A DNA stretch of 30,572 nucleotides, from NCBI RefSeq assembly GCF_006345805.1, contig NW_021832483.1, forward strand, positions 1 to 30,572. The letters are read 5' to 3'. Shown piece by piece: positions 1-29,595 of this stretch; the first letter of the stretch is position 1, and each line of letters opens with the position of its first letter. Under the pieces are notes generated by a model. The model was not told the origin of the DNA. It was given only the letters and a program-made list of their open reading frames with translations, and made no database searches. This DNA is from Octopus sinensis. Lineage: Eukaryota. The translations under genes and the position numbers were made by a program.

Positions 1-80
1 TATATATAGATATATATATATATATATATAGATAGATAGATGATAGATAGAATATAGAGATCGATAGATAGATAGATAGA
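1..80. repeat. (TA)n/(GATA)n microsatellite
   Basis: Directly visible TA and GATA runs. Confidence 0.95.
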
Positions 81-165
81 TGAAATTTTGAATTTAGTTC
101 ACGGATCCCCAGTACTACATTTGCGGACCACCAGGGATCTGCGGGCCCCAGGCTGGGGACCACTG
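81..165. mobile_element. Terminal fragment of a hAT (Charlie/Buster-like) DNA transposon or MITE
   Basis: Ends in GGCTGGGGACCACTG (151-165), i.e. CAGTGGTCCCCAGCC on the other strand, resembling hAT-Charlie TIRs. It is followed by CTATAGTA, an nnnTAnnn 8-mer. The other end is not in the window. Confidence 0.55.
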
Positions 166-3781: not shown

Positions 3782-5068
3782 CGAATGAGAGTCGAAAATT
3801 ACATGCACTCTTATTTTTTAATATATTTACACAAAAGCAGAGGAGAAACAGGTACGTCATTTTCCCATATAGTCCCTCTCCTTTTCGATGCACTTGGTCC
3901 AGCGGTCCACAAGTTTGCATAAGAAGTTTCGGTTGGTCGTGCAACCATTTAAACACCGCTTCCGTCACATCTTCATCTGTCGGAAATCGAAACCTCGTAA
4001 ACCACCTGTGAGTGGTCCAAAGATATGATAGTCAGAAAGGGGAAGATCTGGGCTGTAGGCAAAGTGTTCCAGCACCTTAAAATCCAATTGGTTAGTGGTT
4101 TCAACGGTCTGGGCAGTCGTGTGTGGGCATGCATTGTCACGCATCAACAAAACTTTCTTCAACAATAAACGTTTGGTGCGAATTGCTGGCTTCAGTTCGT
4201 TGGCCAGCGAAGCACTGTGTCTGGCACTGTTGATCGTAGACTCATTTTCCAGATAGTCTTCCAGTATAGGCCCTTTTGAGTCCCCAAAAATGGTTAGCAT
4301 CACCTTTCCCGCAGAAACTGAGTCTTGAATTTCTTCGTCGTTGGCAAGCCAGGATGTTTCCAGTCCATTCTCTGTCTTTTGGATTCTGCCTCATAATGAT
4401 GGACCCACATTTCATCTCCTGTGACTATTCTGCGCAAAAATTCCTCGCCCTCGTTGTAGCGATTGAATGAACGTTGGCAGACCCCAAGACGTTTTCACCT
4501 GTGCTCTGCGCTAAGCTCTCTTGGCACCCATCTTGCACAGACTTTATGGAAGCCGAGATCATCGTGGATGATTTGATAGGTAGAACCTTGACTAATCTAC
4601 AAAGAACGCGTTACCTCATCGATAATGATTCGCCGCTTCACCATTAACATCTCTCTAGCTTACTGAATCTCCTCGTCAGTGGCTGAGGTTGGCGGTCGTT
4701 CTGCTCCCGATTCGTACGCCACGCTTTGTCTGGCCACTTTTAGACTTCTTGATCCACTAATACACAGTTCTACGTGGTTGTGCCCTGTCCCCATATTGTG
4801 CTAAAATTCTCCGATGAATTTCAGCACCTGACACACCTTCCGAGCAGAGAAATCAGATCCCTGTACATTGTTCTTGTTCGATGCACATCGCTAGTGGGGC
4901 GGCCATGCTTACACTGTAAGACCAGAAAGAAAAATGGCGCGATTAGGCTCAAACTTCGATCACGTGAGCACGATAGTATCGTCTATAAGGACGCATGCGC
5001 AGAAGGCGGTGGACCAATAATAAAGATATATTGTGGCAAAAGTGCAAATTAGTTTTGACTTACCCTCG
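3782..5068 (-). mobile_element. Full-length (1287 bp) decayed mariner DNA transposon
   Basis: Imperfect 28-bp TIRs (CGAATGAGAGTCGAAAATTACATGCACT vs CGAGGGTAAGTCAAAACTAATTTGCACT, 19/28 identical) with TA on both sides. A transposase remnant lies inside. Confidence 0.9.
3857..4906 (-). pseudogene. Mariner transposase pseudogene (DD34D)
   Basis: N-terminus MAAPLAMCIEQEQ...GVSGAEIHRRILAQYGD. Catalytic segment DNACPH...YSPDLPLSDY has 34 residues between the two aspartates. C-terminus LVDRWTKCIEKERDYMGK*. Contains internal stops and frameshifts. Confidence 0.93.
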
Positions 5069-5667: not shown

Positions 5668-5857
5668 TATATACATTAAACTACGGTTTACCTCTTAAAT
5701 TACCTGCTGCTGTATTCCTTATACCAAGGACCATACTTACTGAGGTAATTTCCAGGAGTGTGTTTGGATACTTCTATCGTTTAGAGGACTTAACACCTCT
5801 TAACTTATCTTACATAACACAACACACACACACGCATATAATATTATACTATATATA

Positions 5858-5900
<43 letters not shown>

Positions 5901-5907
<7 letters not shown>

Positions 5908-8900
5908 AAAGGCTTAGTAAAATAAATTACTTTGCCGCATACTGAACTCATTAGAAATAGCAGCTAAAAAACTTTTTTAAGGCTATTTCTAATACTTAAA
6001 GAAAATCTCTCTCATATATAGTTTTGCATAATTTAACTCACAAAAGTTTGGGGGTAATGACATCGAAAAATCAAATGCTAAGGTTATTCGAGAACGTACG
6101 TTTCAAGATTAGTCAAACACATTTCTATCATCGGCTCGGAAATTCCTTGGTTTGGATTTGGAAACACTGAAAATAAAACATACCCTCTCGAAGATCTGCT
6201 CCCAACTAACAGTGCCAGCAAATTCAAAATAAGCAAGCGAAGAATCTCTGTTCTCCCCTTTCCACCAGCGTGGGTTAAAATCATCAAACTCTATGCTTAT
6301 TTCGGTAAAGTCCGAAGCATTAATGCAGAGGGAGATTTATATTTCAACAATGAGGGCAAAATTAATTAATTATTAATCATTTCACCAAGTGTTCAGTATG
6401 CAAAGGGACCATTCAAGGCGATTTCAAATTATTACATTATATAAAAGGGCTTAGTAAAATAAATTACTTTGCCGCTACTGAACTCATTAGAAATAGCAGC
6501 TAAAAAACTTTTTTAAGGCTATTTCTAATACTTAAAGAAAATCTCTCTCATATATAGTGTTTGCATAATTAACTCACAAAAGTTTTTGGGGTAATGACAT
6601 CGAAAAATCAAATGCTAAGGTTATTCGAGAACGTACGTTTCAAGATTAGTCAAAACAACATTTCTATCATCGGCTCGGAAATTCCTGGTTTGGATTTGGA
6701 TACACTGAAAATAAGAACATACCCTCTCGAAGATCTGCTCCCAACTAACAGTGCCAGCAAATTCAAAATAAGCAAGCGAAGAATCTCTGTTCTCCCCTTT
6801 CCACCATCGTGGGTTAAAATCATCAAACTCTATGCTTATTTCGGTAAAGTCCGAAGCATTAATCAGAGAGATTAATTATAATTTCAACAATTGAGGCAAA
6901 ATTAATTAATTATTAATCAATTTCACCAAGTGTTCAGTATGCAAAGGGACCATTCAAGGCGATTTCAATTATTACATTATATAAAAGGGCTTAGTAAAAT
7001 AAATTACTTTGCCGCATACTGACTCATTAGAAATAGCAGCTAAAAAAAAACTTTTTTAAGGCTATTTCTAATACTTAAAGAAAATCTCTCTCATATATAG
7101 TGTTTGCATAATTTAACTCACAAAAGTTTGGGGGTAATGACATCGAAAAATCAAATGCTAAGGTTATTCGAGAACGTACGTTTCAAGATTAGTCAAAACA
7201 CCATTTCTATCATCGGCTCGGAATTCCTTGGTTTGGATTTGGAAACACTGAAATAAGAACATACCCTCTCGAAGATCTGCTCCCACTAACAGTGCCAGCA
7301 AATTCAAAATAAGCAAGCGAAGAATCTCTGTTCTCCCTTTCCACCAGCGTGGGTAAAATCATCAAACTCTATGCTTATTTCGGTAAGTCCGAAGCATTAA
7401 TCAGAGGGAGATTAATTATAATTTCAACAATTGAGGGCAAAATTAATTAATTATTAATCAATTTCACCAAGTGTTCAGTATGCAAAGGGACCATTCAAGG
7501 CGATTTCAAATTATTACATTATATAAAAGGGCTTAGTAAAATAAATTACTTTGCCGCATACTGAACTCATTAGAAATAGCAGCTAAAAAACTTTTTTAAG
7601 GCTATTTCTATCTTAAAGAAAATCTCTCTCATATATAGTGTTTGCATAATTTAACTCACAAAAGTTTGGGGTTAATGACATCGAAAAATCAAATGCTAAG
7701 GTTATTCGAGAACGTACGTTTCAAGATTAGTCAAAACAACATTTCTATCATCGGCTCGGAAATTCCTTGGTTTGGATTTGGAAACACTGAAAATAAGAAC
7801 ATACCCTCTCGAAGATCTCTCTCCCAACTAACAGTGCCAGCAAACTTCAAAATAAGCAAGCGAAGAATCTCTGTTCTCCCTTTCCACCAGCGTGGTTTAA
7901 AATCATCAACTCTATGCTTATTTCGGTAAAGTCCGAAACATTAATCAGAGGGAGATTAATTATAATTTCAACAATTGAGGGCAAAATTAATTAATTATTA
8001 ATCAATTTCACCAAGTGTTCAGTATGCAAAGGGACCATTCAAGGCGATTTCAAATTATTACATTATAATAAAGGGCTAGTAAAATAAATTACTTTGCCGC
8101 ATACTGAACTCATTAGAAATAGCAGCTAAAAAACTTTTTTAAGGCTATTTCTAATACTTAAGAAAATCTCTCTCATATATAGTGTTGCATAATTAACTCA
8201 CAAAAGTTTGGGGGTAATGACTCGAAAAATCAAATGCTAAGGTTATTCGAGAACGTACGTTTCAAGATAGTCAAACAACATTCTATCATCGGCTCGGAAA
8301 TTCCTTGGTTTGGATTTGGAAACACTGAAAATAAGAACCTACCCTCTCGAAGATCTGCCTCCCAACTAACAGTGGCAGCAAATTCAAAATAAGCAAGCGA
8401 AGATCTCTGTTCTCCTCCCCTTTCCACCAGCGTGGGTTAAAATCATCAAACTCTATGCTTATTTCGGTAAAGTCCGAAGCATTAATCAGAGGGAGATTAA
8501 TTATAATTTCAACAATTGAGGGCAAAATTAATTAATTATTAATCAATTTCACCAAGTGTTCAGTATGCAAAGGGACCATTCAAGGCGATTTCAAATTATT
8601 ACATTATATAAAAGGGCTTAGTAAAATAAATTACTTTGCCGCATACTGACTCATTAGAAATAGCAGCCTAAAAAACTTTTTTAAGGCTATTTCTAATACT
8701 TAAAGAAAATCTCTCTCATATATAGTGTTTGCATAATTTAACTCACAATTTGGGGGTAATGACATCGAAAAGTCAAATGCTAAGGTTATTCGAGAACGTA
8801 CGTTCAAGATTGTCAAAACAACATTTCTATCATCGGCTCGGAAATTCCTTGGTTTGGATTTGGAAACACTGAAAATAAGAACATACCCTCTCGAAGATCT

Positions 8901-11900
8901 GCTCCCAACTAACAGTGCCAGCAAATTCAAAATAAGCAAGCGAAGAATCTCTGTTCTCCCCTTTCCACCAGCGTGGGTTAAAATCATCAAACTCTATGCT
9001 TATTTCGGTAAAGTCCGAAGCATTAATCATAGGGAGATTAATTATAATTTCAACAATTGAGGGCAAAATTAATTAATTATTAATCATTTCACCAAGTGTT
9101 CAGTATGGCAAAGGGAACCATCAAGGCGATTTCAAATTATTACATTATATAAAAGGGCTTAGTAAAATAAATTACTTTGCCGCATACTGAACTCATTAGA
9201 AATAGCAGCTAAAAAACTTTTTAAGGCTATTTCTAATACTTAAAGAAAATCTCTCTCATATATAGTGTTTGGCATAATTTAACTCACAAAAGTTTGGGGG
9301 GGTAATGACATCGAAAAATCAAATGCTAAGGTTATTCGAGAACGTACGTTTCAAGATTAGTCAAAACAACATTTCTATCATCGGCTCGGATTCCTTGGTT
9401 TGGATTTGGAAACACTGAAAATAAGAACATACCCTCTCGAAGATCTGCTCCCAACTAACAGTGCCAGCAAATTCAAAATAAGCAAGCGAAGAATCTCTGT
9501 TCTCCCTTTCCACCAGCGTGGGTTAAAATCATCAAACTCTATGCTTATTTCGGTAAAGTCCGAAGCATTAATCAGAGGAGATTAATTATAATTTCAACAA
9601 TTGAGGGCAAAATTAATTAATTATTATCAATTTCACCAGTGTTTCAGTATGCAAAGGGACCATTCAAGGCGATTTCAAATTATTACATTATATAAAAGGG
9701 CTTAGTAAAATAAATTACTTTGCGCATACTGAACTCATTAGAAATAGCAGCTAAAAAACTTTTTTAAGGCTATTTCTAATACTTAAAGAAAATCTCTCTC
9801 ATATATAGTGTTTGCATAATTTAACTCACAAAAGTTTGGGGGTAATGACATCGAAAAATCAAATGCTAAGGTTATTCGAGAACGTACGTTTCAAGATTAG
9901 TCAAAACAACATTTCTATCATCGGCTCGGAAATTCCTTGGTTTGGATTTGGAACACTGAAAATAAGAACATACCTCTCGAAGATCTGCTCCCAACTAACA
10001 GTGCAGCAAAATCAAAATAAGCAAGCGAAGAATCTCTGTTCTCCCCTTTCCACCAGCGTGGGTTAAACATCAAACTCTATGCTTATTTCGGTAAAGTCCG
10101 AAGCATTAATCAGAGGGAGATTAATATAATTTCAACAATTGAGGGCAAAATTAATTAATTATTAATCAATTTCACCAGTGTTTCAGTATGCAAAGGGACC
10201 ATTCAAGGCGATTTCAAATTATTACATTATATAAAAGGGCTTAGTAAAATAAATTACTTTGCCGCATACTGAACTCATTAGAAATAGCAGCTAAAAAACT
10301 TTTTTAAGGCTATTTCTAATACTTAAAGAAAATCTCTCTCATATATAGTGTTTGCATAATTTAACTCACAAAAGTTTGGGGGTAATGACATCGAAAAATC
10401 AAATGCTAAGGTTATTCGAGAACGTACGTTTCAAGATTAGTCAAACACAACATTTCTATCATCGGCTCGGAAATTCCTTGGTTTGGATTTGGAACACTGA
10501 AAATAAGAACATACCCTCTCGAAGATCTGCTCCCAACTAACAGTGCCAGCAATTCAAAATAAGCAAGCGAAGAATCTCTGTTCTCCCCTTTCCACCAGCG
10601 TGGGTTAAAATCATCAAACTCTATGCTTATTTCGTTAAGTCCGAAGCATTAATCAGAGGGAGATTAATTATAATTTCAACAATTGAGGGCAAAATTAATT
10701 AATATTAATCAATTTCACCAAGTGTTCAGTATGCAAAGGGACCATTCAAGGCGATTTCAAATTATTACATTATATAAAAGGCTTAGTAAAATAAATTACT
10801 TGCCGCATACTGAACTCATTAGAAATAGCAGCTAAAAAACTTTTTTAAGGCTATTCTAATACTTAAAGAAAATCTCTCTCATAATAGTGTTTGCATAATT
10901 TAACTCACAAAAGTTTGGGGGTAATGACATCGAAAAATCAAATGCTAAGGTTATTCGAGAACGTACGTTTCAAGATTAGTCAAAACAACATTTCTATCAT
11001 CGGCTCGGAATTCCTTGGTTTGGATTTGAAACACTGAAAATAAGAACATACCCTCTCGAAGATCGGCTCCCACTAACAGTGCCAGCAAATTCAAAATAAG
11101 CAAGCGAGAATCTCTGTTCTCCCCCTTTCCCCCCCACACGTGGGTTAAAATCATCAAACTCTATGCTTATTTCGGTAAGTCCGAAGCATAATCAGAGGAG
11201 ATTAATTATAATTTCAACAATTGAGGGCAAAATTAATTAATTATTAATCAATTTCACCAAGTGTTCAGTATGCAAAGGGACCATTCAAGGCGATTTCAAA
11301 TTATTACATTATATAAAAGGGCTTAGTAAAATAATTACTTTGCCGCATACTGAACTCATTAGAAATAGCAGCTAAAAAACTTTTTTAAGGCTATTTCTAA
11401 TACTTAAGAAAATCTCTCTCATATATAGTGTTTGCATAATTTAACTCACAAAAATTTGGGGTAATGACATCGAAAAATCAAATGCTAAGGTTATTCGAGA
11501 ACGTACGTTTCAAGATTAGTCAAAACAACATTTCTATCATCATCGGCTCGGAAATTCCTTGGTTTGGATTTGGAAACACTGAAAATAAGAACATACCCTC
11601 TCGAAGATCTGCTCCCACTACAGTGCAGCAAATTCAAAATAAGCAACGAAGAATCTCTGTTCTCCCCTTTCCACCAGCGTGGGTTAAAATCATCAAACTC
11701 TATGCTTATTTCGGTAAAGTCCGAAGCATTAATCAGAGGGAGATTATTATAATTTCAACAATTGAGGGCAAAATTAATTAATTATTAATCAATTTCACCA
11801 AGTGTTCAGTATGCAAAGGGACCATTCAAGGCGATTTCAAATTATTACATTATATAAAAGGGCTTAGTAAAATAAATTACTTTGCCGCATACTGAACTCA

Positions 11901-12723
11901 TTAGAAATAGCAGCTAAAAAACTTTTTTAAGGCTATTCTAATACTTAAAGAAAATCTCTCTCTATATAGTGTTTGCATAATTTACTCACAAAAGTTTGGG
12001 GGTAATGACATCGAAAAATCAAATGCTAAGGTTATTCGAGAACGTACGTTTCAAGATTAGTCAAAACAACATTTCTATCATCGGCTCGAAATTCCTTGGT
12101 TTGGATTTGGAAACACTGAAAAAAACATACCCTCTCAAGATCTGCTCCCAACTAACAGTGCCAGCAAATTCAAAATAAGCAAGCGAAGAATCTCTGTTCT
12201 CCCCTTTCCACCAGCGTGGGTTAAAATCATCAAACTCTATGCTTATTTCGGTAAAGTCCGAAGCATTAATCAGAGGAGATTAATTATAATTTCAACAATT
12301 GAGGGCAAAATTAATTAATTATTAATCAATTTCACCAAGTGTTCAGTATGCAAAGGGACCATTCAAGGCGATTTCAAATTATTACATTATATAAAAGGGC
12401 TTAGTAAAATAAATTACTTTGCCGCATACTGAACTCATTAGAAATAGCAGCTAAAAAAAAACTTTTTTAAGGCTATTTCTAATACTTAAAGAAAATCTCT
12501 CTCATATATAGTGTTTGCATAATTTAACTCACAAAAGTTTGGGGGTAATGACATCGAAAAATCAAATGCTAAGGTTATTCGAGAACGTACGTTTCAAGAT
12601 TAGTCAAAACACATTTTCTATCATCGGCTCGGAAATTCCTTGGTTTGGATTTGGAAACACTGAAAATAAGACATACCCTCTCGAAGATCTGCTCCCAACT
12701 AACAGTGCCAGCAAATTCAAAAT
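5901..12723 (-). repeat. Tandem array of ~540-bp units (12 complete + partial 13th), hammerhead-bearing strand is minus
   Basis: Unit starts (TTATATAAAAGG) at about 5901, 6437, 6977, 7519, 8063, 8604, 9145, 9688, 10227, 10770, 11309, 11850 and 12387. Differences between units are mostly 1-bp indels. Confidence 0.98.
6087..6141 (-). ncRNA. Type I minimal hammerhead ribozyme-like motif (first unit; repeated in every unit of the left arm)
   Basis: Plus strand TTCGAG-AAC-GTAC-GTTTC...TCATCGG-CTCGGAA is the reverse complement of the motif detailed at 12931-12987. Confidence 0.6.
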
Positions 12724-12930
12724 TGTTGAAATTATAATTAATCTCCCTCTGATTAATGCTTCGGACTTTACCGAATAAGCATAGAGTTTGATGATTTTAA
12801 CCCACGCTGGGAAAGGGGAGACAGAGATTCTTCGCTTGCTTATTTTGAATTTGCTGGCACTGTTAGTTGGGAGCAGATCTTCGAGAGGGTATGTTCTTAT
12901 TTTCAGTGTTTCCAATCCAAACCAAGGAAT

Positions 12931-12987
12931 TTCCGAGCCGATGATAGAAATGTTGTTTTGACTAATCTTGAAACGTACGTTCTCGAA
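12931..12987 (+). ncRNA. Type I minimal hammerhead ribozyme-like motif, predicted cleavage after 12981 (GUU)
   Basis: Stem I CGAG(12934-37)/CTCG(12982-85). Core CCGATGA (12938-44, U4C variant). Stem II region 12945-69 (AGA/TCT plus GTT/GAC). GAAAC (12970-74), palindromic tetraloop GTAC, then GT-T. Confidence 0.65.
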
Positions 12988-13472
12988 TAACCTTAGCATT
13001 TGATTTTTCGATGTCATTACCCCCAAACTTTGTGAGTTAAATTATGCAAACACTATATATGAGAGAGATTTTCTTTAAGTATTAGAAATAGCCTTAAAAA
13101 GTTTTTTAGCTGCTATTTCTAATGAGTTCAGTATGCGGCAAAGTAATTTATTTTACTAAGCCCTTTTATATAATGAATAATTTGAAATCGCCTTGAATGG
13201 TCCCTTTGCATACTGAACACTTGGTGAAATTGATTAATAATTAATTAATTTTGCCCTCAATTGTTGAAATTATAATTAATCTCCCTCTGATTAATGCTTC
13301 GGACTTTACCGAAATAAGCATAGAGTTTGATGATTTTAACCCACGCTGGTGGAAAGGGGAGAACAGAGATTCTTCGCTTGCTTATTTTGAATTTGCTGGC
13401 ACTGTTAGTTGGGAGCAGATCTTCGAGAGGGTATTTCTTATTTTCAGTGTTTCCAAATCCAAACCAAGGAAT

Positions 13473-13529
13473 TTCCGAGCCGATGATAGAAATGTTGTTT
13501 TGACTAATCTTGAAACGTACGTTCTCGAA
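13473..13529 (+). ncRNA. Type I minimal hammerhead ribozyme-like motif, predicted cleavage after 13523
   Basis: Identical to the motif at 12931-12987; the predicted cleavage sites are 542 bp apart. Confidence 0.65.
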
Positions 13530-13808
13530 TAACCTTAGCATTGATTTTTCGATGTCATTACCCCCAAACTTTGTGAGTTAAATTATGCAAACACTATATA
13601 TGAGAGAGATTTTCTTTAAGTATTAGAAATAGCCTTAAAAAAGTTTTTTAGCTGCTATTTCTAATGAGTTCAGATGCGGCAAAGTAATTTATTTTACTAA
13701 GCCCTTTTATATAATGTAATAATTTGAAATCGCCTTGAATGGTCCCTTTGCATACTGAACACTTGGTGAAATTGATTAATAATTAATTAATTTTGCCCTC
13801 AATTGTTG

Positions 13809-13812
<4 letters not shown>

Positions 13813-13901
<89 letters not shown>

Positions 13902-15531: not shown

Positions 15532-15783
15532 GCCCGCTACGCATGCAAGACTCTAGGAGCTCCAACAAAACTTGTGATAAAGAGAAAATAATAATAATGA
15601 CATCAATGATAATAACAACAACATTATTAATATCATTATTGTGGTTGTTGTTCGTTTTGGGTCGATATACTAAGAACCAGTTGAGCATTGGAGTCCATGT
15701 ACTCAACTCCCCACCACCGCCACCACCCAAAATTTCAGGCCTTGAACCTATAGTAGAAAAGATTATTATTATCATTATTATTA

Positions 15784-15846
<63 letters not shown>

Positions 15847-15893
15847 TATTATTATTATTATTATTATTATCATTATTATTATTATTATTATTA

Positions 15894-15935
<42 letters not shown>

Positions 15936-15994
15936 TCTTCTTCTTCTTTCTTCTTATTATTATTACTATTATATTATTATTATTATTATTATTA

Positions 15995-16029
<35 letters not shown>
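15372..16029. repeat. Compound triplet microsatellite region (AAC/ACT/ACC/AAT then TAT) with short unique spacer
   Basis: Direct. Confidence 0.9.
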
Positions 16030-21127: not shown

Positions 21128-21147
21128 CATCATCATCATTATTATCA

Positions 21148-21233
<86 letters not shown>

Positions 21234-21243
21234 GTTGTTGTTG

Positions 21244-21277
<34 letters not shown>

Positions 21278-21286
21278 TGTTGTTGT

Positions 21287-21317
<31 letters not shown>

Positions 21318-21351
21318 GTTGTTGTTGTTATTATTATTATTATTACTGTTG

Positions 21352-21415
<64 letters not shown>

Positions 21416-21420
21416 TGTTG

Positions 21421-21456
<36 letters not shown>
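21097..21456. repeat. Compound (CAT)n/(TAT)n/(GTT)n microsatellite
   Basis: Direct. Confidence 0.95.
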
Positions 21457-21458
<2 letters not shown>

Positions 21459-21478
21459 ATAAAGTAAGCATATCTTAA

Positions 21479-22455: not shown

Positions 22456-23086
22456 ATGTATGTATGTATATATATGTGTATGTGCGTGTGTATGTATGTA
22501 TGCGTGTATGTGTGTGTGTATGTATGTATGTATGTATGTATGTGTGTATGTATGTATGTGTGTATGTATGTATGTATGTGTGTATGTATGTGTGTATGTA
22601 TGTGTGTATGTATGTATGTATGTGTGTGTGTATGTATGTATGTATGTATGTGTGTATGTATGTATGTATGTATGTATGTATGTGTGTATGTATGTATGTG
22701 TGTATGTATGTATGTGTGTATGTATGTATATATGTATGTATGTATGTATGTGTGTATGTATTGTATATATATGTATGTATGTGTATGTGTGTATGTATGT
22801 ATGTATGTGATGTATGTATGTAGTGTGTATGTGTGTATGTAATGTATGTATGTATGTATGATAGTATGTGTATGTATGTATGTATGTATGTGTGTATGGT
22901 GTGTACGTATGTGTGTATGTATGTGTGTATGTATGTATGTATGTGTGTGTGTATGTATGTATGTGTGTATGTATGTATGTATGTGTGTATATATGTATGT
23001 ATATATGTATGTATGTATATGTGTGTATGTATATGTGTATGTACGCCCGTACTATTATGTACGTACGTACATACGTATGTATATAT

Positions 23087-23132
<46 letters not shown>

Positions 23133-23449: not shown

Positions 23450-26400
23450 ACAAGCTTGCCAATGTTAGAAGAAACATTATAAAAAAGAATTACTGACTGA
23501 AGTAGAGATTGATCAGGTTAGACAAGCAATATCGGGATAAAATGAACGAAGCTGCAGCTAGAGAAGATAATACAGAGGAAATGATTATAGACCAGCCCAG
23601 GGCTGATAAAAACGAAGAGAGGATTGAAAGAGTTAGTATAAGTGATAGGCAAAGTGAAATACGCCCTGAACCAATCATAAACACTAAGACAGATGAGCAT
23701 CAAATAGATAAAGAAAGTCACACAAATATTGACCCAACAGAACTACATGAGCTAAAAAATCAAATCATGATTGAATGGCTGAAAATTAAAGAACCAGCAT
23801 GGATGAGCGTGATTACACTTCCTAAAATCCGCAACTCTAACCAAAACATGAAAATAATTGGTAAAATCCGGCTTGCACTTAAGGATATAATTTCAGTTAA
23901 TGATGTTGATATCACAAACCTCAACCACCTATACTATGCATCCGCGAAAATCTCAACGATCCTATGTGGTGTAAAGATTAGAAAACGGCAACAGTCCCAC
24001 AAAAAGCCTTCTTGGCAAGAGCGTCTGCAACAACAATTAAAATATTTAGATCTGACATTGAATATTTGAAAAACCTTAAGGCTCACAAGATTACCAAACC
24101 TACAAAAACCCAAAAATTACTGAAAAAATACAATATGAAAACTATACTTGATATTGATGCACCATAGAAACCATCAAACAAAAGGTATCTGCCAAAGCTG
24201 CCGCATAGCGAGGTATGAAAAGCGTATTAGATTCTTCAGGGACAACAACATGTTCAAAATAAACACCAAGAATTTTTACAGGAAGATAGGAAAAAAAGCG
24301 TTTACTGCAGGGTCTGTACCATCAAAGAAGAAAGAGTGCAGAGATTTTGGAATAAAATCTGGGCAGAAGAAAAAAACACAAACGAAAAGGCCCCCTGGAT
24401 TGACAGAATATCTACAGAATTGGCCCTTAGAAGAGCAAAAGTGGAGGGGTGTCAAGGTAGAAGATATAAGATGCTCTCAGGAGGTCAAGCAAATGGAAGT
24501 CTCCAGGAAAGGATAAAACTAACTTCTGGCTGAATGCCTTCCCAGAGAGCCATGAACTGCTAACAGAACTGTACAATGATGTTTTGCAACACCCTAGTAG
24601 GATGCCTCCTTGGCTAGTTAATGGGTTAACATTCCTGCTTCCAAAAAGTGAAGAAAAACAAATGAACCAAAAAACTATAGACCCATAACCTGCTTAACAA
24701 CTATGTACAAAACACTAAAATCTGTCCTGACGGAATATACCTATAGTTTTTTAACAGACAGCAGCATATTCCCTAATGAACAGAAAGGATGTAAACGTGG
24801 ATCCTACGGCTGTAAAGACCAACTACTCATCAATAAGATGATCTTAGAAGATTGTCACAAACGACACAAAAACTTATCATAGCCTGGATAGACTATAAAA
24901 GGCTTTTGATAGCCTACCACATAGCTGGATTAGGAAATGCCTTGAATGTATAAGATAGCACCAACTCTGCGAAACTTCTTGACTGTAAGTATGAGATCAT
25001 GGAGAACCACACTAACTCTGAACAGTGACAGTGAATCCCTAAATGCTGGTGATGTAAAAATTTCGTGTGGCATTTTCCAGGGTGACTCACTGTCACCACT
25101 CCTCTTTTGTTTATCCTTAATACCTCTCTCAAAGCTGCTCAATGTGCGCAGTACGGGTATAAAATGTTTGATAAAAATATAAATCATCTCGTTTACATGG
25201 ATGATTTAAAGCTTTTTGCAAAAAATGATCAACAACTCAAGGGCTTACTAGCGATAGTCAAACAATTCAGTGACGACATCAGAATGCAATTCGGCCTCGA
25301 TAAATGTGCAAGGCTACCTTTATCAAAGGAAAAATGACAGAAACATCTAACGTAACCTTGACCAACAGAATGTAAAAAGAACTAGACCCAGCGGAGAGCT
25401 ACAAGTACCTAGGGATAATTGAAGGGAACGGAATAAGGCATTCAGAGATGAAGGAAAGGATCAGGAGAGAATGCTATCGAAGAGTGAGAGCAATACTCAA
25501 GACAGAGCTGAATGCAAGAAACAGGATCGAAGCAATCAATGCATTAGCTATACCAGTCGTGACTTACAGTTTCAATATTGTTAACTGGTCAATTACTGAA
25601 ATATGTCAGCTCGACAGAAAAATAAGGAAACTGTTGACAATGCATAGAATGCACCACCCTAAGGCAGATACAGAACGACTCTATCTGCAAGAAAAGAGGG
25701 AGCCGTGGTCTTTTTGCAACTGGCAGTAACAATGAAGATTGCTACAATTGGCCTAGACACCTACCTGAAAAACTCTGAGGACTGGATGCTAAAACTTGTC
25801 TCAAAACATGAAAAGAAGAAAGCATCATACTCAGTCACAAAACAGGCAAAGGAATATCTAAGTGAATTCCGAATACAACCAATTTCGGAATTAGAGATAG
25901 ATATACAAAGAAACAAGCACAGAAAAGCTAGGCGCATGAAAACCCGTGCCAAAACTGCGGCCTTAGATATTCTGAATAATAAATGGCAAGAAAAAACCTC
26001 TCTATGGCAAATACCCAAAGAGAGCGAATAATGCAGATATCGACAAAGCCCTGACCCATCAATGGCTAATGGCCTCTGGCTTAAAATCTGAAACAGAGAG
26101 GGGTTATCATAGCAGCTCAAGATCAATGCCTACCAACAAGAAACTACCAGGCCAACATATTAAAGATCAGAAGCAGTCCAACGTGTCGTGTATGCAAGCA
26201 ACAAAATGAAACCATTGACCATGTGGTCTCCAAGTGCAGTCTTCTAGCGCCTACAGAGTATCTCAACAGGCACGATAGAGCTGCACAATATATTCACTGG
26301 GTAATCTGTAAAAACCTGGATTTGCCCCATGAAAAAAACTGGTGGGAACACAAACCACCCCCAGTGCTTGAAATGACCACATCTCACTCCTCTGGAACTT

Positions 26401-26753
26401 CACCATTCAAACTGACAGGAAGATAGATGCAAATAGGCCAGACATCATATTGAAAAACTTCAAACAAAGAACATGCCTCCTCATTGATATGACTGTCCCA
26501 ATCGATATAAACGTATCTGTCAAGACCTACCAAAAAACTGAGCAAATATAAAGATCTTGAAATAGAAATCAGCAAAATGTGGAAGCTGAAGACTAAAACA
26601 ATACCTGTTTGACATAGGTGCCCTGGGAATGATAGCAAAAGGGGCTGTATAGCTACCTAACTCAGATACCAGGAAACCCAAAAAATGGCAGAAGTTCAAA
26701 AGATAGTGCTCATGGGAACTGCTCATATCCTACGCAAAATACTCTCTATGTAA
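23450..26753 (+). pseudogene. Frameshifted R4/Dong ORF (reverse transcriptase / restriction-like endonuclease)
   Basis: Consecutive ORF-track fragments 23509-24069, 24148-24516, 24946-25182, 25107-25337, 25448-25729, 25705-26031 and 26223-26426 tile one polyprotein. Confidence 0.92.
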
Positions 26754-26968
26754 TCTCAAGGTTTAAAACAAACATAATTTTCGGTTTAAAAAAAAAAAAA
26801 AAAAAAACCTTTTTTTTTTAGACATTCATTAGTACAACATCCCCACCCCCCAAATATATGGCACACTAGGCATAACAACAACATGAACTTCCAACCCTGT
26901 TGTCTCTTGAGGTCTCTGGGTGAGACTTGGAGCCAACTTGTACAAATATAAAGCAAAAGTCAAACATA

Positions 26969-28995: not shown

Positions 28996-29595
28996 TGTGT
29001 GTGTGTGTATAAGTAATATTCGTAGCAACTTTAACATGGCTGTCCGTTCGAGCGAACTCTACTGCGATTTTTTTAACCCCAAGAGGACATCTCCAGCTGG
29101 TTAACGATGCGAGTTGCAGCAGGGGAGCGAACCCCTACCATCTCCGAGCGACGGGACCAGTAGACCAGTCCTGGTTTCGGGCGATTTCTGCCACTCCTCA
29201 GTATTGGACATCTCGTCTGCTAGAGATGATAGCAGCTCGCTTATATACAGATTCTGCGTCACCAACTAACGTGTTATATATTATGCCAAAAGCATTTGGT
29301 CAGTTTCTTCCTATATATGAGAAATTGAGTTTCCAGTTTTCTGGATTACCGAACAATAAGAGCGCAATCTTTTCATGAAGGTACAACAATCAAAGAAACG
29401 GTTCTGTAAGAAGATTCCCATTTATTGTTCTGTTTATCGAAAAGAAAAAAAAATTTCTTTGTAAAATAAATAAACGGGACTTAAATGAACCGGAAACATG
29501 AAAATAAGGAACTTTTCCTACAAGTAACCTGGCGCCATTGCGAGGTGTTTCAATGACTAAACATCCATTGCTAATTTAACCATACAACACGCGGT

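What the first reader, a model, noticed from the sequence alone, without database searches (positions are those of the whole stretch)
5901..13812. ~540-bp satellite in which every unit carries a Type I hammerhead-ribozyme motif: candidate cephalopod retrozyme
SEEN: each unit contains, on one strand, CGAG-CCGATGA-[25 nt]-GAAAC-GTAC-GT-T-CTCG (clearest on + at 12931-12987 and 13473-13529). All elements are in hammerhead order: 4-bp helix I, C3-N4-GAUGA core, GAAA, 2-bp helix III closed by the palindromic tetraloop GUAC, and an NUH (GUU) site. Predicted cleavage sites are ~540 nt apart. KNOWN: tandem repeats bearing Type I hammerheads include newt satellite 2, Schistosoma Sm-alpha, Dolichopoda pDo500 and metazoan non-LTR retrozymes, which are processed to monomeric or circular RNAs. 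Penelope-like elements carry minimal hammerheads with palindromic loop III that cleave as dimers. INFERENCE: this array is the genomic footprint of a ~540-nt self-cleaving, possibly circular, non-coding RNA mobilised in trans. I do not know whether this family has been described.
Basis: partly seen in the sequence, partly recalled or inferred. Interest (0 to 1): 0.92.

Follow-up and report, generated by a model that had tools for sequence, protein, structure and literature searches.

The report
Tandem repeat with weak hammerhead-like motif
A 541-bp non-coding repeat array carries, once per unit, a sequence laid out like an animal hammerhead self-cleaving RNA but with a non-standard core, so it is probably a mobile "retrozyme"-type insertion whose ribozyme is weak or decayed: an interesting but not new kind of element.

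Summary
Window 5907-13812 is a ~541-bp tandem array, GC 34%, with units about 98% identical. The string CGAG-CCGATGA-(22-28 nt)-GAAAC-GTAC-GT-T-CTCG occurs exactly 14 times. A 15th copy has a 1-nt deletion in GAAA.

The layout matches validated animal retrozyme hammerheads. The closest is axolotl Ax353: U.U at the base of helix II, a 2-bp helix III and a palindromic tetraloop.

Three things count against it:
- The motif has C at core position 4, which is normally U, not "N".
- Helix II is AU-rich with a 17-nt loop.
- Helix I has only 4 contiguous pairs.

No Rfam hammerhead model matches it, even at E<=10. A model I built from four validated retrozyme hammerheads scores it 7.8 bits (E~3.7). The chance of such a motif in a shuffled unit is 0.1-0.5%.

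New supporting evidence comes from the array's shape. It is two head-to-head arms (12.6 and 2.0 units). Both 3' ends abut a (TA)n microsatellite, as expected from priming on both DNA strands by a Penelope-like element (PLE). The monomer RNA is also unusually structured (z = -4.5).

No homologous copies could be retrieved, so covariation is untested. The best reading is a young retrozyme-like insertion with a variant, weak or decayed hammerhead (~0.5). A plain satellite with a chance motif is ~0.33.

The parts
5836..5906 (.). (TA)n microsatellite abutting the 3' end of the main arm; presumed half of the insertion target
5907..12723 (-). Main arm of the array: 12.6 units of ~541 bp, motif-sense on the minus strand. 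The 5' end is at unit position 406 (window 12723). The 3' end is at unit position ~195-201 (window ~5907), inside the unit's TATATAAT
12724..13812 (+). Inverted arm: 2.0 units, motif-sense on the plus strand. The 5' end is at unit position ~281-284 (window 12724). The 3' end is at unit position ~293-296 (window 13812), where the unit continues ATTATAAT
12693..12872 (.). Head-to-head junction of the two arms. It is not a perfect foldback: the palindrome arms (31 nt nearest the junction; the full pair is 12534-12723 / 12842-13031) are separated by a 118-nt spacer. About 3 nt of microhomology (AAT) lie at 12723/12724. This palindrome also gives a spurious Rfam MIR5649 hit
   Evidence: (I8)
13813..13901 (.). 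(AT)n followed by (ATAG)n, abutting the 3' end of the inverted arm; presumed other half of the target. A compound microsatellite of the same type lies at window 1-81
12934..12985 (+). Hammerhead-like motif (consensus form): CGAG / CCGAUGA / U-AGA-(17 nt)-UCU-U / GAAA / C-GUAC-G / U-U / CUCG. Predicted cut between 12981 and 12982
13476..13527 (+). Hammerhead-like motif, consensus form; predicted cut between 13523 and 13524
12580..12631 (-). Hammerhead-like motif; variant in the helix II region (AGAAAAUGUGUUUUG)
12037..12088 (-). Hammerhead-like motif. In this copy the C that bulges from helix I is missing, which gives 6 contiguous helix I pairs. It is the best-scoring copy with model R1 (11.1 bits)
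11496..11550 (-). Hammerhead-like motif with a 3-nt GAT duplication after the first core box, which shifts the helix II register
10956..11007 (-). Hammerhead-like motif, consensus form
10417..10469 (-). Hammerhead-like motif with a 1-nt insertion in the loop 2 region
9877..9928 (-). Hammerhead-like motif, consensus form
9337..9388 (-). Hammerhead-like motif, consensus form
8791..8840 (-). Defective copy: GAAC instead of GAAAC (core deletion) and a deletion in the 3' side of helix II
8248..8296 (-). Hammerhead-like motif with three 1-nt deletions in the helix II region
7707..7758 (-). Hammerhead-like motif, consensus form
7169..7220 (-). Hammerhead-like motif with one substitution in loop 2
6626..6677 (-). 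Hammerhead-like motif, consensus form
6089..6138 (-). Hammerhead-like motif with a 2-nt deletion in loop 2

Best explanation
The array is most likely the footprint of one recent insertion of a non-coding, non-autonomous retroelement of the animal 'non-LTR retrozyme' kind.

Proposed mechanism:
1. A multimeric or circular ~541-nt RNA was reverse-transcribed by a Penelope-like element (PLE) enzyme.
2. That enzyme had nicked both strands of a (TA)n(ATAG)n microsatellite.
3. cDNA synthesis primed from both nicks produced two head-to-head arms (12.6 and 2.0 units). Their 3' ends sit in the (TA)n tract, at TA-rich positions of the unit.

Each unit carries a type I hammerhead-derived motif of the animal 'dimeric' design: a 2-bp helix III closed by the palindromic loop GUAC, so that two copies can form an 8-bp intermolecular helix III. 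If the ribozyme works, cleavage after ...GAAACGUACGUU would release 541-nt monomers that a tRNA ligase could circularise.

The motif is a weak variant: C4 instead of U4, U.U at 10.1-11.1, an AU-rich helix II with a 17-nt loop, and U17. I therefore expect at best slow, dimer-dependent cleavage. It may be a decayed, inactive relic.

Shown: the array, the motif, the geometry, the structured RNA.
Inferred: the retrotransposition origin, homology of the motif to real hammerheads, any catalysis, any circular RNA.
For: - Motif present in 14 of 15 units in the correct order; chance per shuffled unit 0.09-0.47%, or 0.025% with a palindromic helix III.
- Same layout as validated retrozyme hammerheads. 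Mussel Mg353 reads GAAAC-GCGC-GUC. Axolotl Ax353 reads CUGAUGA-U-GCC..GGC-U-GAAAC-ACGU-GUA, with a U.U base of helix II, and cleaves weakly as a monomer and better as a dimer. Ax353 and the candidate pass the same 'relaxed' descriptor and fail the strict one.
- The helix III segment ACGUACGU is self-complementary. Its duplex energy is -9.8 kcal/mol, against -10.3 for Ax353.
- U.U at 10.1-11.1 is the best-tolerated mispair, and a U4C viroid variant remains viable.
- The unit has no ORF longer than 92 aa and no protein homologue. GC is 34% and the size is within the retrozyme range.
- The circular monomer fold has z = -4.5 on the motif strand. Validated coral and mussel retrozymes give -3.4 and -1.2.
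- The arms are head-to-head and both 3' ends abut (TA)n, which covers only 2% of the rest of the window.
- PLE insertions are described as tandem with an inverted 5'-truncated upstream copy, with a bias for (TA)n. A purified PLE protein nicks and extends both strands.
- Retrozymes are proposed to be PLE derivatives.
- The units differ almost only by singleton 1-nt indels, with roughly 15 real substitutions in 7.9 kb. That fits one young event.
Against: - No Rfam hammerhead family matches, at gathering score or at E<=10, even when only 121 nt are searched.
- A covariance model built from four validated retrozyme hammerheads gives 7.7-8.0 bits (E~3.7 for the window). That is no better than random places in the window and worse than a solo motif at 29157-29207.
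- U4 belongs to the uridine turn, and single mutants there have low activity. [quoted passage not shown]
- All four validated motifs have 6 contiguous helix I pairs and a GC-rich helix II. The candidate has 4 helix I pairs and 3 weak helix II pairs.
- The hammerhead fold costs +1.7 kcal/mol (or -3.6 with all optional pairs), against an MFE of -11.3 to -12.5 that pairs the helix II region with GAAACGUACGU.
- The helix II/loop 2 stretch is the most variable 30-nt bin of the unit, and its changes ignore pairing.
- Microsatellites are very dense in this window and satellite arrays often contain inversions, so the geometry is suggestive rather than diagnostic.
- No PLE gene lies in the window.
- No other copies were found, so there is no covariation test.
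Confidence: 0.5

Rival explanations
1. An ordinary satellite DNA that grew by unequal exchange or replication slippage at the DNA level. The hammerhead-like string is a chance resemblance, copied 15 times only because the whole unit was copied. The inversion and the (TA)n flanks are incidental in a region packed with microsatellites.
For: - All 15 copies are one evolutionary observation, because the units are ~98% identical.
A per-unit chance of 0.1-0.5%, or ~3% per unit from the model E-value, is then not negligible.
- No Rfam hit.
- Non-consensus C4, a U.U mispair and a weak helix II.
- A 10-nt palindrome is expected about once every two units by chance (my estimate: 546 x 4^-5).
- The antisense strand is also strongly structured (z = -3.8), as expected from DNA-level inverted repeats rather than selection on one RNA strand.
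- TRF reports 60 repeat rows in 30 kb.
Against: - The combination of correct order, spacing, A15.1-U16.1, a non-G at position 17, helix I adjacent to both core boxes and a palindromic helix III occurs in only 0.025% of shuffled units.
- The layout matches an experimentally active motif (Ax353) feature by feature.
- Both array ends lie exactly in (TA)n, which covers 2% of the flanking sequence, and the arms have 5' ends inward and 3' ends outward. Unequal exchange does not predict this.
Confidence: 0.33
2. One reading: a fully functional type I hammerhead that efficiently processes array transcripts into abundant 541-nt linear and circular RNAs, which currently spread in trans.
For: - The array is very young, with about 0.2% real substitutions.
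- The motif is intact in 14 of 15 units.
- A dimer-capable helix III.
- A highly structured monomer RNA with helix I closing the molecule.
- Precedents exist for each single deviation: U4C, U.U and a short stem II.
Against: - Three or four weakening features are combined in one motif (C4, U.U, AU-rich 3-bp helix II with a 17-nt loop, U17). None of the four validated retrozyme motifs combines them.
- No conserved loop 1/loop 2 contact is recognisable.
- Model scores are at noise level.
Confidence: 0.2
3. The repeat is cargo of, or was generated by, another process: tandem repeats carried by a different transposon class, reinsertion of extrachromosomal circular DNA, or an inversion that is an assembly artefact of noisy long reads.
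For: - Differences between units are dominated by 1-nt indels (135 indel calls against about 15 real substitutions). This suggests an unpolished long-read assembly.
- Such assemblies can contain chimeric foldbacks.
Against: - The junction is not a perfect foldback: unit position 406 is joined to ~281, with a 118-nt asymmetric spacer.
- The inverted arm runs on into unique flanking sequence through (AT)n(ATAG)n.
- No terminal inverted repeats, Helitron-type ends or transposase are associated with the array.
Confidence: 0.07

Closest known systems
Axolotl non-LTR retrozyme Rtz_353 with hammerhead HHR_Amex2 (Cervera and de la Pena 2020, PMC7229834)
   Same: - A tandem non-coding repeat of a few hundred bp.
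- A type I motif with a U.U mismatch at the base of helix II followed by 3 pairs.
- A 2-bp helix III (A-U, C-G) closed by a palindromic tetraloop (ACGU there, GUAC here). Its helix III segment gives a -10.3 kcal/mol self-duplex, against -9.8 here.
- Weak as a monomer and better as a dimer in vitro.
   Different: Amex2 has the consensus CUGAUGA (U4), 6 contiguous helix I pairs, a GC-only helix II (GCC/GGC) with a 5-nt loop, and A17. The candidate has C4, 4 contiguous helix I pairs (6 with a bulged C), AGA/UCU with a 17-nt loop, and U17. The unit is 541 bp rather than 353 bp. There is no sequence homology outside the core.
Mytilus galloprovincialis retrozyme Mg353 (mollusc; PMC7229834)
   Same: A mollusc tandem repeat with low GC (37% against 34%). 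Helix III is GAAAC-GCGC-GUC, the same 2-bp stem plus palindromic tetraloop. The element is expressed as linear and circular RNA.
   Different: The mussel motif has a consensus core, G10.1-C11.1, a 4-bp helix II with a 5-nt loop and 6-bp helix I, and it cleaves efficiently. No homology to the candidate unit was seen beyond the motif.
Minimal hammerheads of Penelope-like elements (Cervera and de la Pena 2014, PMC4209133) and PLE insertion architecture (Craig et al. 2021, PMC8557442; Frangieh et al. 2024, PMC11167929)
   Same: - Short helix I (4-5 bp).
- An extra nucleotide after A9.
- A palindromic 15.2-16.2/loop 3 and the dimer model.
- Low in vitro activity.
- Tandem insertions with an inverted 5'-truncated copy upstream.
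- A bias for (TA)n targets, and nicking and extension of both DNA strands.
   Different: PLE minimal hammerheads keep a highly conserved G10.1-C11.1 and U4 and have a long (6-8 bp) helix II. PLEs encode RT and GIY-YIG endonuclease, which are absent here. The 30-40-bp 'tail' signature was not identified.
Newt satellite 2, Schistosoma Sm-alpha and Dolichopoda pDo500 hammerhead repeats (from my own knowledge and the introductions of PMC7229834 and PMC4209133)
   Same: Tandem or dispersed repeats that carry one type I hammerhead per unit and are transcribed and processed to unit length.
   Different: These match Rfam Hammerhead_1 with consensus cores. The candidate matches no Rfam hammerhead model.

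Membership tests
Hammerhead ribozyme, type I | First core box C3-U4-G5-A6-N7-G8-A9 | tested here: not met
   The sequence is C-C-G-A-U-G-A, so position 4 is C in all 15 copies. U4 is part of the required core. CUGA-turn mutants have low activity. A U4C viroid variant is nevertheless viable.
Hammerhead ribozyme, type I | Second core box G12-A13-A14, the A15.1-U16.1 pair, and a non-G at position 17 | tested here: met
   GAAA...U-U in 14 of 15 copies. One copy has lost an A of GAAA.
Hammerhead ribozyme, type I | Helix II starting with a standard 10.1-11.1 pair (usually G-C) and at least 2 pairs | tested here: not met
   U10.1.U11.1 mismatch, then A-U, G-C, A-U and a 17-nt loop. U.U is the best-tolerated mispair and occurs in active natural motifs. 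The strict criterion still fails.
Hammerhead ribozyme, type I | Helix I paired next to the core on both sides | tested here: met
   CGAG/CUCG, 4 Watson-Crick pairs. Two more A-U pairs follow after a bulged C, and a distal AAGG/CCUU stem. Validated animal motifs have 6 contiguous pairs.
Hammerhead ribozyme, type I | Helix III; in animal motifs a 1-2-bp stem with a small palindromic loop that allows dimers | tested here: met
   A-U and C-G closed by GUAC. ACGUACGU is self-complementary, with a duplex energy of -9.8 kcal/mol.
Hammerhead ribozyme, type I | Score at or above the Rfam gathering threshold for a hammerhead model | tested here: not met
   No hammerhead hit at gathering score, at E<=10 over 8 kb, or at E<=10 over 121 nt. 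My own model of validated retrozyme motifs gives 7.8 bits, E~3.7.
Hammerhead ribozyme, type I | Covariation that keeps helices I-III among diverged homologues | not testable with these tools
   The units are ~98% identical with almost no substitutions. No other copies were found in the window, in metagenome, genome or viral contigs, or through predicted proteins.
Hammerhead ribozyme, type I | Site-specific self-cleavage | not testable with these tools
   This needs in vitro transcription or RNA end mapping.
Animal non-LTR retrozyme | Head-to-tail tandem repeat of tens to hundreds of bp, low GC, no LTR, PBS or PPT | tested here: met
   541-bp units, 12.6 + 2.0 copies, GC 34%. The published range is 51-972 bp with GC below 50%.
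Animal non-LTR retrozyme | At least two consecutive units, each with a complete type I hammerhead | tested here: inconclusive
   Consecutive units all carry the motif, but it fails consensus descriptors at U4 and at 10.1-11.1.
Animal non-LTR retrozyme | Non-coding | tested here: met
   The longest stop-free stretch in the consensus trimer is 92 aa, and there is no homologue among 5.8 billion proteins.
Animal non-LTR retrozyme | Expressed as unit-length linear and circular RNA | not testable with these tools
   No transcript data are available. The predicted circular monomer is strongly structured (z = -4.5). This is compatible but not specific.
Animal non-LTR retrozyme | Co-occurrence with PLEs, and similarity of the unit to PLE pseudo-LTRs | not testable with these tools
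   There is no PLE in the window. The only RT is a degenerate LINE at about 23,500-26,807. The source genome cannot be searched.
PLE-type insertion signature | Tandem copies with an inverted 5'-truncated copy at the upstream end | tested here: met
   The 5' ends of both arms meet at 12723/12724 and the 3' ends point outward. This is described for PLEs. Extension of both strands is shown.
PLE-type insertion signature | Insertion into a microsatellite, often (TA)n | tested here: met
   (TA)n lies directly at both ends. (TA)n covers 2.0% of the rest of the window.
PLE-type insertion signature | 30-40-bp 'tail' extension at one end | not tested
   This cannot be defined without other insertions of the same family.

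The most novel reading that the evidence does not exclude
The motif is a naturally active hammerhead with C at core position 4, a U.U base of helix II and a GUU cleavage site. It works only as a dimer across tandem units. In this reading, the locus preserves a single insertion event in which a PLE enzyme primed on both strands of a (TA)n tract and copied a multimeric or circular 541-nt retrozyme RNA by rolling-circle reverse transcription. It would be the first retrozyme family characterised in its host lineage (possibly a cephalopod) and a rare natural core variant.
Probability: 0.2. Interest if true: 0.55.

Novelty: new member of a known kind. Interest (0 to 1): 0.35.

Why it matters
If the motif cleaves, it would add a natural U4C/U.U/U17 variant to the known hammerhead sequence space. 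It would also add a 541-nt retrozyme family to a lineage where none has been characterised.

The locus is also a clean example of the insertion geometry expected when a Penelope-like enzyme copies a multimeric retrozyme RNA from both strands of a (TA)n target. Retrozyme mobilisation by PLEs is currently inferred mainly from co-occurrence and sequence similarity, so this bears on how it works.

If the motif is a chance match or a dead relic, the locus is an ordinary young satellite. It would then mainly show that relaxed hammerhead descriptors on repeats give plausible-looking false positives.

Tried and rejected
- TRF on the window missed the array because its longest period is 500. The repeat finder recovered it.
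- Rfam at gathering score and at E<=10 gave no ribozyme of any class in the array. The only 'significant' hit, MIR5649, is the inversion palindrome.
- The MFE fold of the 81-nt motif region has z = -0.05 and is not the hammerhead fold.
- Copies elsewhere: a protein search with a spurious ORF that spans the motif, motif and unit patterns in metagenome, genome and viral contigs, and blastn of the consensus against the rest of the window. All found nothing.
- Taxon check: the upstream ORF of the LINE has no homologue. Its RT tail hits ENA Mb-scale contigs at 75% identity or less, with no organism names. 'Cephalopod' therefore stays unverified.
- tRNA/SINE origin and promoter or terminator scans found nothing above background.
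ORF-wise Pfam found only a mariner fragment.
- A literature search for a described ~540-bp octopus satellite or a cephalopod retrozyme found none.
- I considered a Helitron or other DNA-transposon origin and rejected it for lack of terminal signatures.
- I considered a perfect-foldback assembly artefact and judged it unlikely, because the junction is asymmetric.

Full report
**1. What is there**

The window is AT-rich, microsatellite-dense eukaryotic DNA. It contains a mariner transposase fragment and a degenerate LINE.

From 5907 to 13812 lies a tandem array with copies spaced 536-546 bp apart. TRF missed it only because its longest period is 500. Cutting at the predicted cleavage site gives 13 full units of 537-546 bp plus four partial ones. 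The consensus is 546 nt.

The array has two arms:
- 5907-12723 carries the motif on the minus strand (12.6 units).
- 12724-13812 carries it on the plus strand (2.0 units).

The units are about 98% identical. Of 153 variant alignment columns, 121 are singletons. Indel calls number 135, against roughly 15 genuine substitutions; most apparent 'substitutions' are shifted indels. So the array is very young or homogenised, and part of the variation is probably long-read assembly noise. The consensus has no stop-free stretch above 92 aa. A translated unit ORF has no relative among 5.8 billion proteins.

**2. The motif**

The exact pattern CGAGCCGATGA-N(20-30)-GAAACGTACGTTCTCG occurs 14 times in the window and never in shuffles. 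A 15th copy at 8791-8840 (minus) has lost one A of GAAA.

In hammerhead numbering the consensus reads:
- helix I: CGAG/CUCG
- first core box: C3-C4-G5-A6-U7-G8-A9
- helix II: U10.1.U11.1, then A-U, G-C, A-U, around a 17-nt loop
- second core box: G12-A13-A14
- helix III: A15.1-U16.1 and C15.2-G16.2, closed by GUAC
- cleavage position: U17

Helix I can be extended by two A-U pairs past a bulged C, and by a distal AAGG/CCUU stem.

Its 'C3-N4' is not. The consensus has U at position 4 and N at position 7.

**3. Chance**

My own type I descriptor leaves position 4 free. It requires at least 4 helix I pairs, GAAA, at least 2 helix III pairs and a non-G at position 17. On 20,000 dinucleotide shuffles of the unit (both strands) it hits:
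- 0.47% with no helix II requirement;
- 0.09% if three helix II pairs are required with a base mismatch allowed;
- 0.025% if helix III must be palindromic.

It hits nothing in the remaining 22 kb of the window. Four experimentally validated retrozyme hammerheads pass this descriptor. The axolotl Ax353 motif passes only the relaxed version, exactly like the candidate.

The resemblance is therefore unlikely for one unit taken alone. But all 15 copies are a single evolutionary observation, and the motif was selected after reading many windows.

**4. Model-based tests are negative**

Rfam reports no hammerhead at gathering score. It reports none at E<=10 over the 8-kb array, or over a 121-nt stretch centred on the motif.

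I built a covariance model, R1, from coral Amil224, mussel Mg353 and axolotl Ax353 and Ax330. Their sequences come from the supplement of PMC7229834. R1 scores the satellite motif 7.7-8.0 bits (E~3.7 for the window). One copy that has lost the bulged C scores 11.1 bits. Unrelated places in the window score as well.

The best hit of R1 is a different, solitary motif at 29157-29207 on the minus strand (13.3 bits). That site also draws a sub-threshold Rfam Hammerhead_HH9 match (12.5 bits). The satellite motif draws none.

**5. Energetics**

The hammerhead fold of the candidate costs +1.7 kcal/mol with the minimal pairs, or -3.6 with all optional pairs. The MFE is -11.3 to -12.5 kcal/mol, and it pairs the helix II region with GAAACGUACGU. 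The same calculation gives -3.9 to -12.2 kcal/mol for the four validated motifs. All four have 6 contiguous helix I pairs and a GC-rich helix II.

The helix III segment ACGUACGU is self-complementary, with a duplex energy of -9.8 kcal/mol. For Ax353 the value is -10.3. So the dimer route is open.

**6. Literature on the deviations**

- Animal type I hammerheads typically have a 1-2-bp helix III with a small palindromic loop and act as dimers.
- The axolotl HHR_Amex2 motif has a 2-bp helix III with a tetraloop and a U.U mismatch at the base of helix II. It cleaves 22% in one hour as a monomer and much better as a dimer. Its sequence, CUGAUGA-U-GCC-CACUA-GGC-U-GAAAC-ACGU-GUA, has the same layout as the candidate.
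- U.U is the best-tolerated 10.1-11.1 mispair. Stem II can be as short as two pairs.
- A U4C viroid variant keeps enough activity in vivo, but loses much in vitro.
- In a full single and double mutant scan, all CUGA-turn mutants other than the C:G pair swap had low activity.
- Perreault et al. reject any hit with a core change or a mispair next to the core. They remark that such rejects are mainly cryptic mutant hammerheads in repeated elements.

Each deviation has a precedent. The combination does not.

**7.

Mapping the arm ends onto the consensus gives:
- Main arm: 5' end at unit position 406 (window 12723); 3' end at about unit position 195-201 (window about 5907), inside the unit's TATATAAT.
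- Inverted arm: 5' end at about unit position 281-284 (window 12724); 3' end at about unit position 293-296 (window 13812), where the unit continues ATTATAAT.

The arms are therefore head-to-head. They are joined with about 3 nt of microhomology and an asymmetric 118-nt spacer, so this is not a perfect foldback.

Both 3' ends run directly into (TA)n. On the left this is 5836-5906. On the right it is 13813 onward, followed by (ATAG)n. (TA)n runs of at least 6 repeats cover only 2.0% of the rest of the window. A compound (TA)n(ATAG)n tract of the same type sits at 1-81.

This is the geometry expected if both strands of a (TA)n target were nicked and each 3'-OH primed cDNA synthesis on a multimeric or circular RNA. 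It fits what is published for PLEs:
- PLE insertions are tandem, with an inverted 5'-truncated copy upstream, and are biased towards microsatellites such as (TA)n.
- A purified PLE protein nicks and extends both strands, unlike R2 or LINE-1.
- Animal retrozymes are proposed to be non-autonomous PLE derivatives, spread by a rolling-circle mechanism.

This step is inference. The window holds no PLE gene, and microsatellites are dense here.

**8. RNA structure of the whole unit**

The monomer from cut site to cut site folds to -135 kcal/mol (z = -4.5; 0 of 100 shuffles fold as well). Helix I closes the molecule. Folded as a circle, the motif strand gives z = -4.5 and the antisense strand -3.8. 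The validated coral retrozyme gives -3.4 and the mussel retrozyme -1.2. This is compatible with a retrozyme RNA. It is not strand-specific enough to prove selection on RNA.

**9. What could not be done**

The host taxon could not be established. No expression data are available.

**10. Verdict**

- Observation: confirmed.
- Interpretation: partly supported.

My estimates:
- about 0.5 that this is a retrozyme-type insertion whose motif descends from a real hammerhead;
- about 0.2 that it cleaves usefully today (a sub-case of the first);
- about 0.33 that it is a plain satellite with a chance motif;
- about 0.07 for other origins or an assembly artefact.

These readings overlap, so the figures need not sum to 1.

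Even in the best case this is a new member of a known kind. Tandem type I hammerhead repeats are well described in animals, including molluscs. Retrozyme units of 51-972 bp are reported. Rfam hammerheads are already annotated in a cephalopod genome.

Interest: 0.35.

Noticed in passing
window 29140-29216, minus strand: A solitary hammerhead-like motif with a consensus core: CCAAUA-CUGAGGA-G(U)GGC-AGAAAUC-GCCC-GAAA-CCAGGACUGG-UC|UACUGG. It has G10.1-C11.1, a 4-bp helix III, and helix I with 5 of 6 pairs. It is the best window hit of my retrozyme-hammerhead model (13.3 bits, E~0.09) and a sub-threshold Rfam Hammerhead_HH9 match (12.5 bits against a gathering score of 52). It shows no similarity to the satellite unit. 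It may be a decayed remnant of a PLE or SINE-like element, or chance.
   Followed up: partly
window ~23,500-26,807, plus strand: A degenerate non-LTR (LINE) retrotransposon. RT motifs (NYRPITCL, FDSLPHSW, GIFQGDSLSPLLF, YMDDLKLF) are spread over three frames with many stops. It ends in a poly(A) run at 26788-26807. Its RT tail has 330 relatives at 75% identity or less, mostly on Mb-scale ENA contigs with no organism names. It is not a Penelope-like element.
   Followed up: partly
window 3965-4303, minus strand: A mariner/Tc1-type transposase fragment (Pfam Transposase_1, E = 3.7e-06).
   Followed up: no
window 12693-12872: The head-to-head junction of the two arms produces an Rfam 'MIR5649' match (39.7 bits, E = 2e-05, below the gathering score of 100). 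This is an artefact of the long palindrome, not a microRNA.
   Followed up: yes
window 5907-13812: Differences between units are overwhelmingly singleton 1-nt indels, many in homopolymer runs (135 indel calls against about 15 real substitutions). This looks like residual long-read consensus error in the assembly rather than biology.
   Followed up: partly
whole window, e.g. 1-81, 15762-16029, 21138-21460, 22456-23089: Microsatellite density is extremely high: 60 TRF rows in 30 kb, including (ATGT)160, (ATT)108 and (ATT)89. The compound (TA)n(ATAG)n tract at 1-81 is of the same type as the array's flanks.
   Followed up: no
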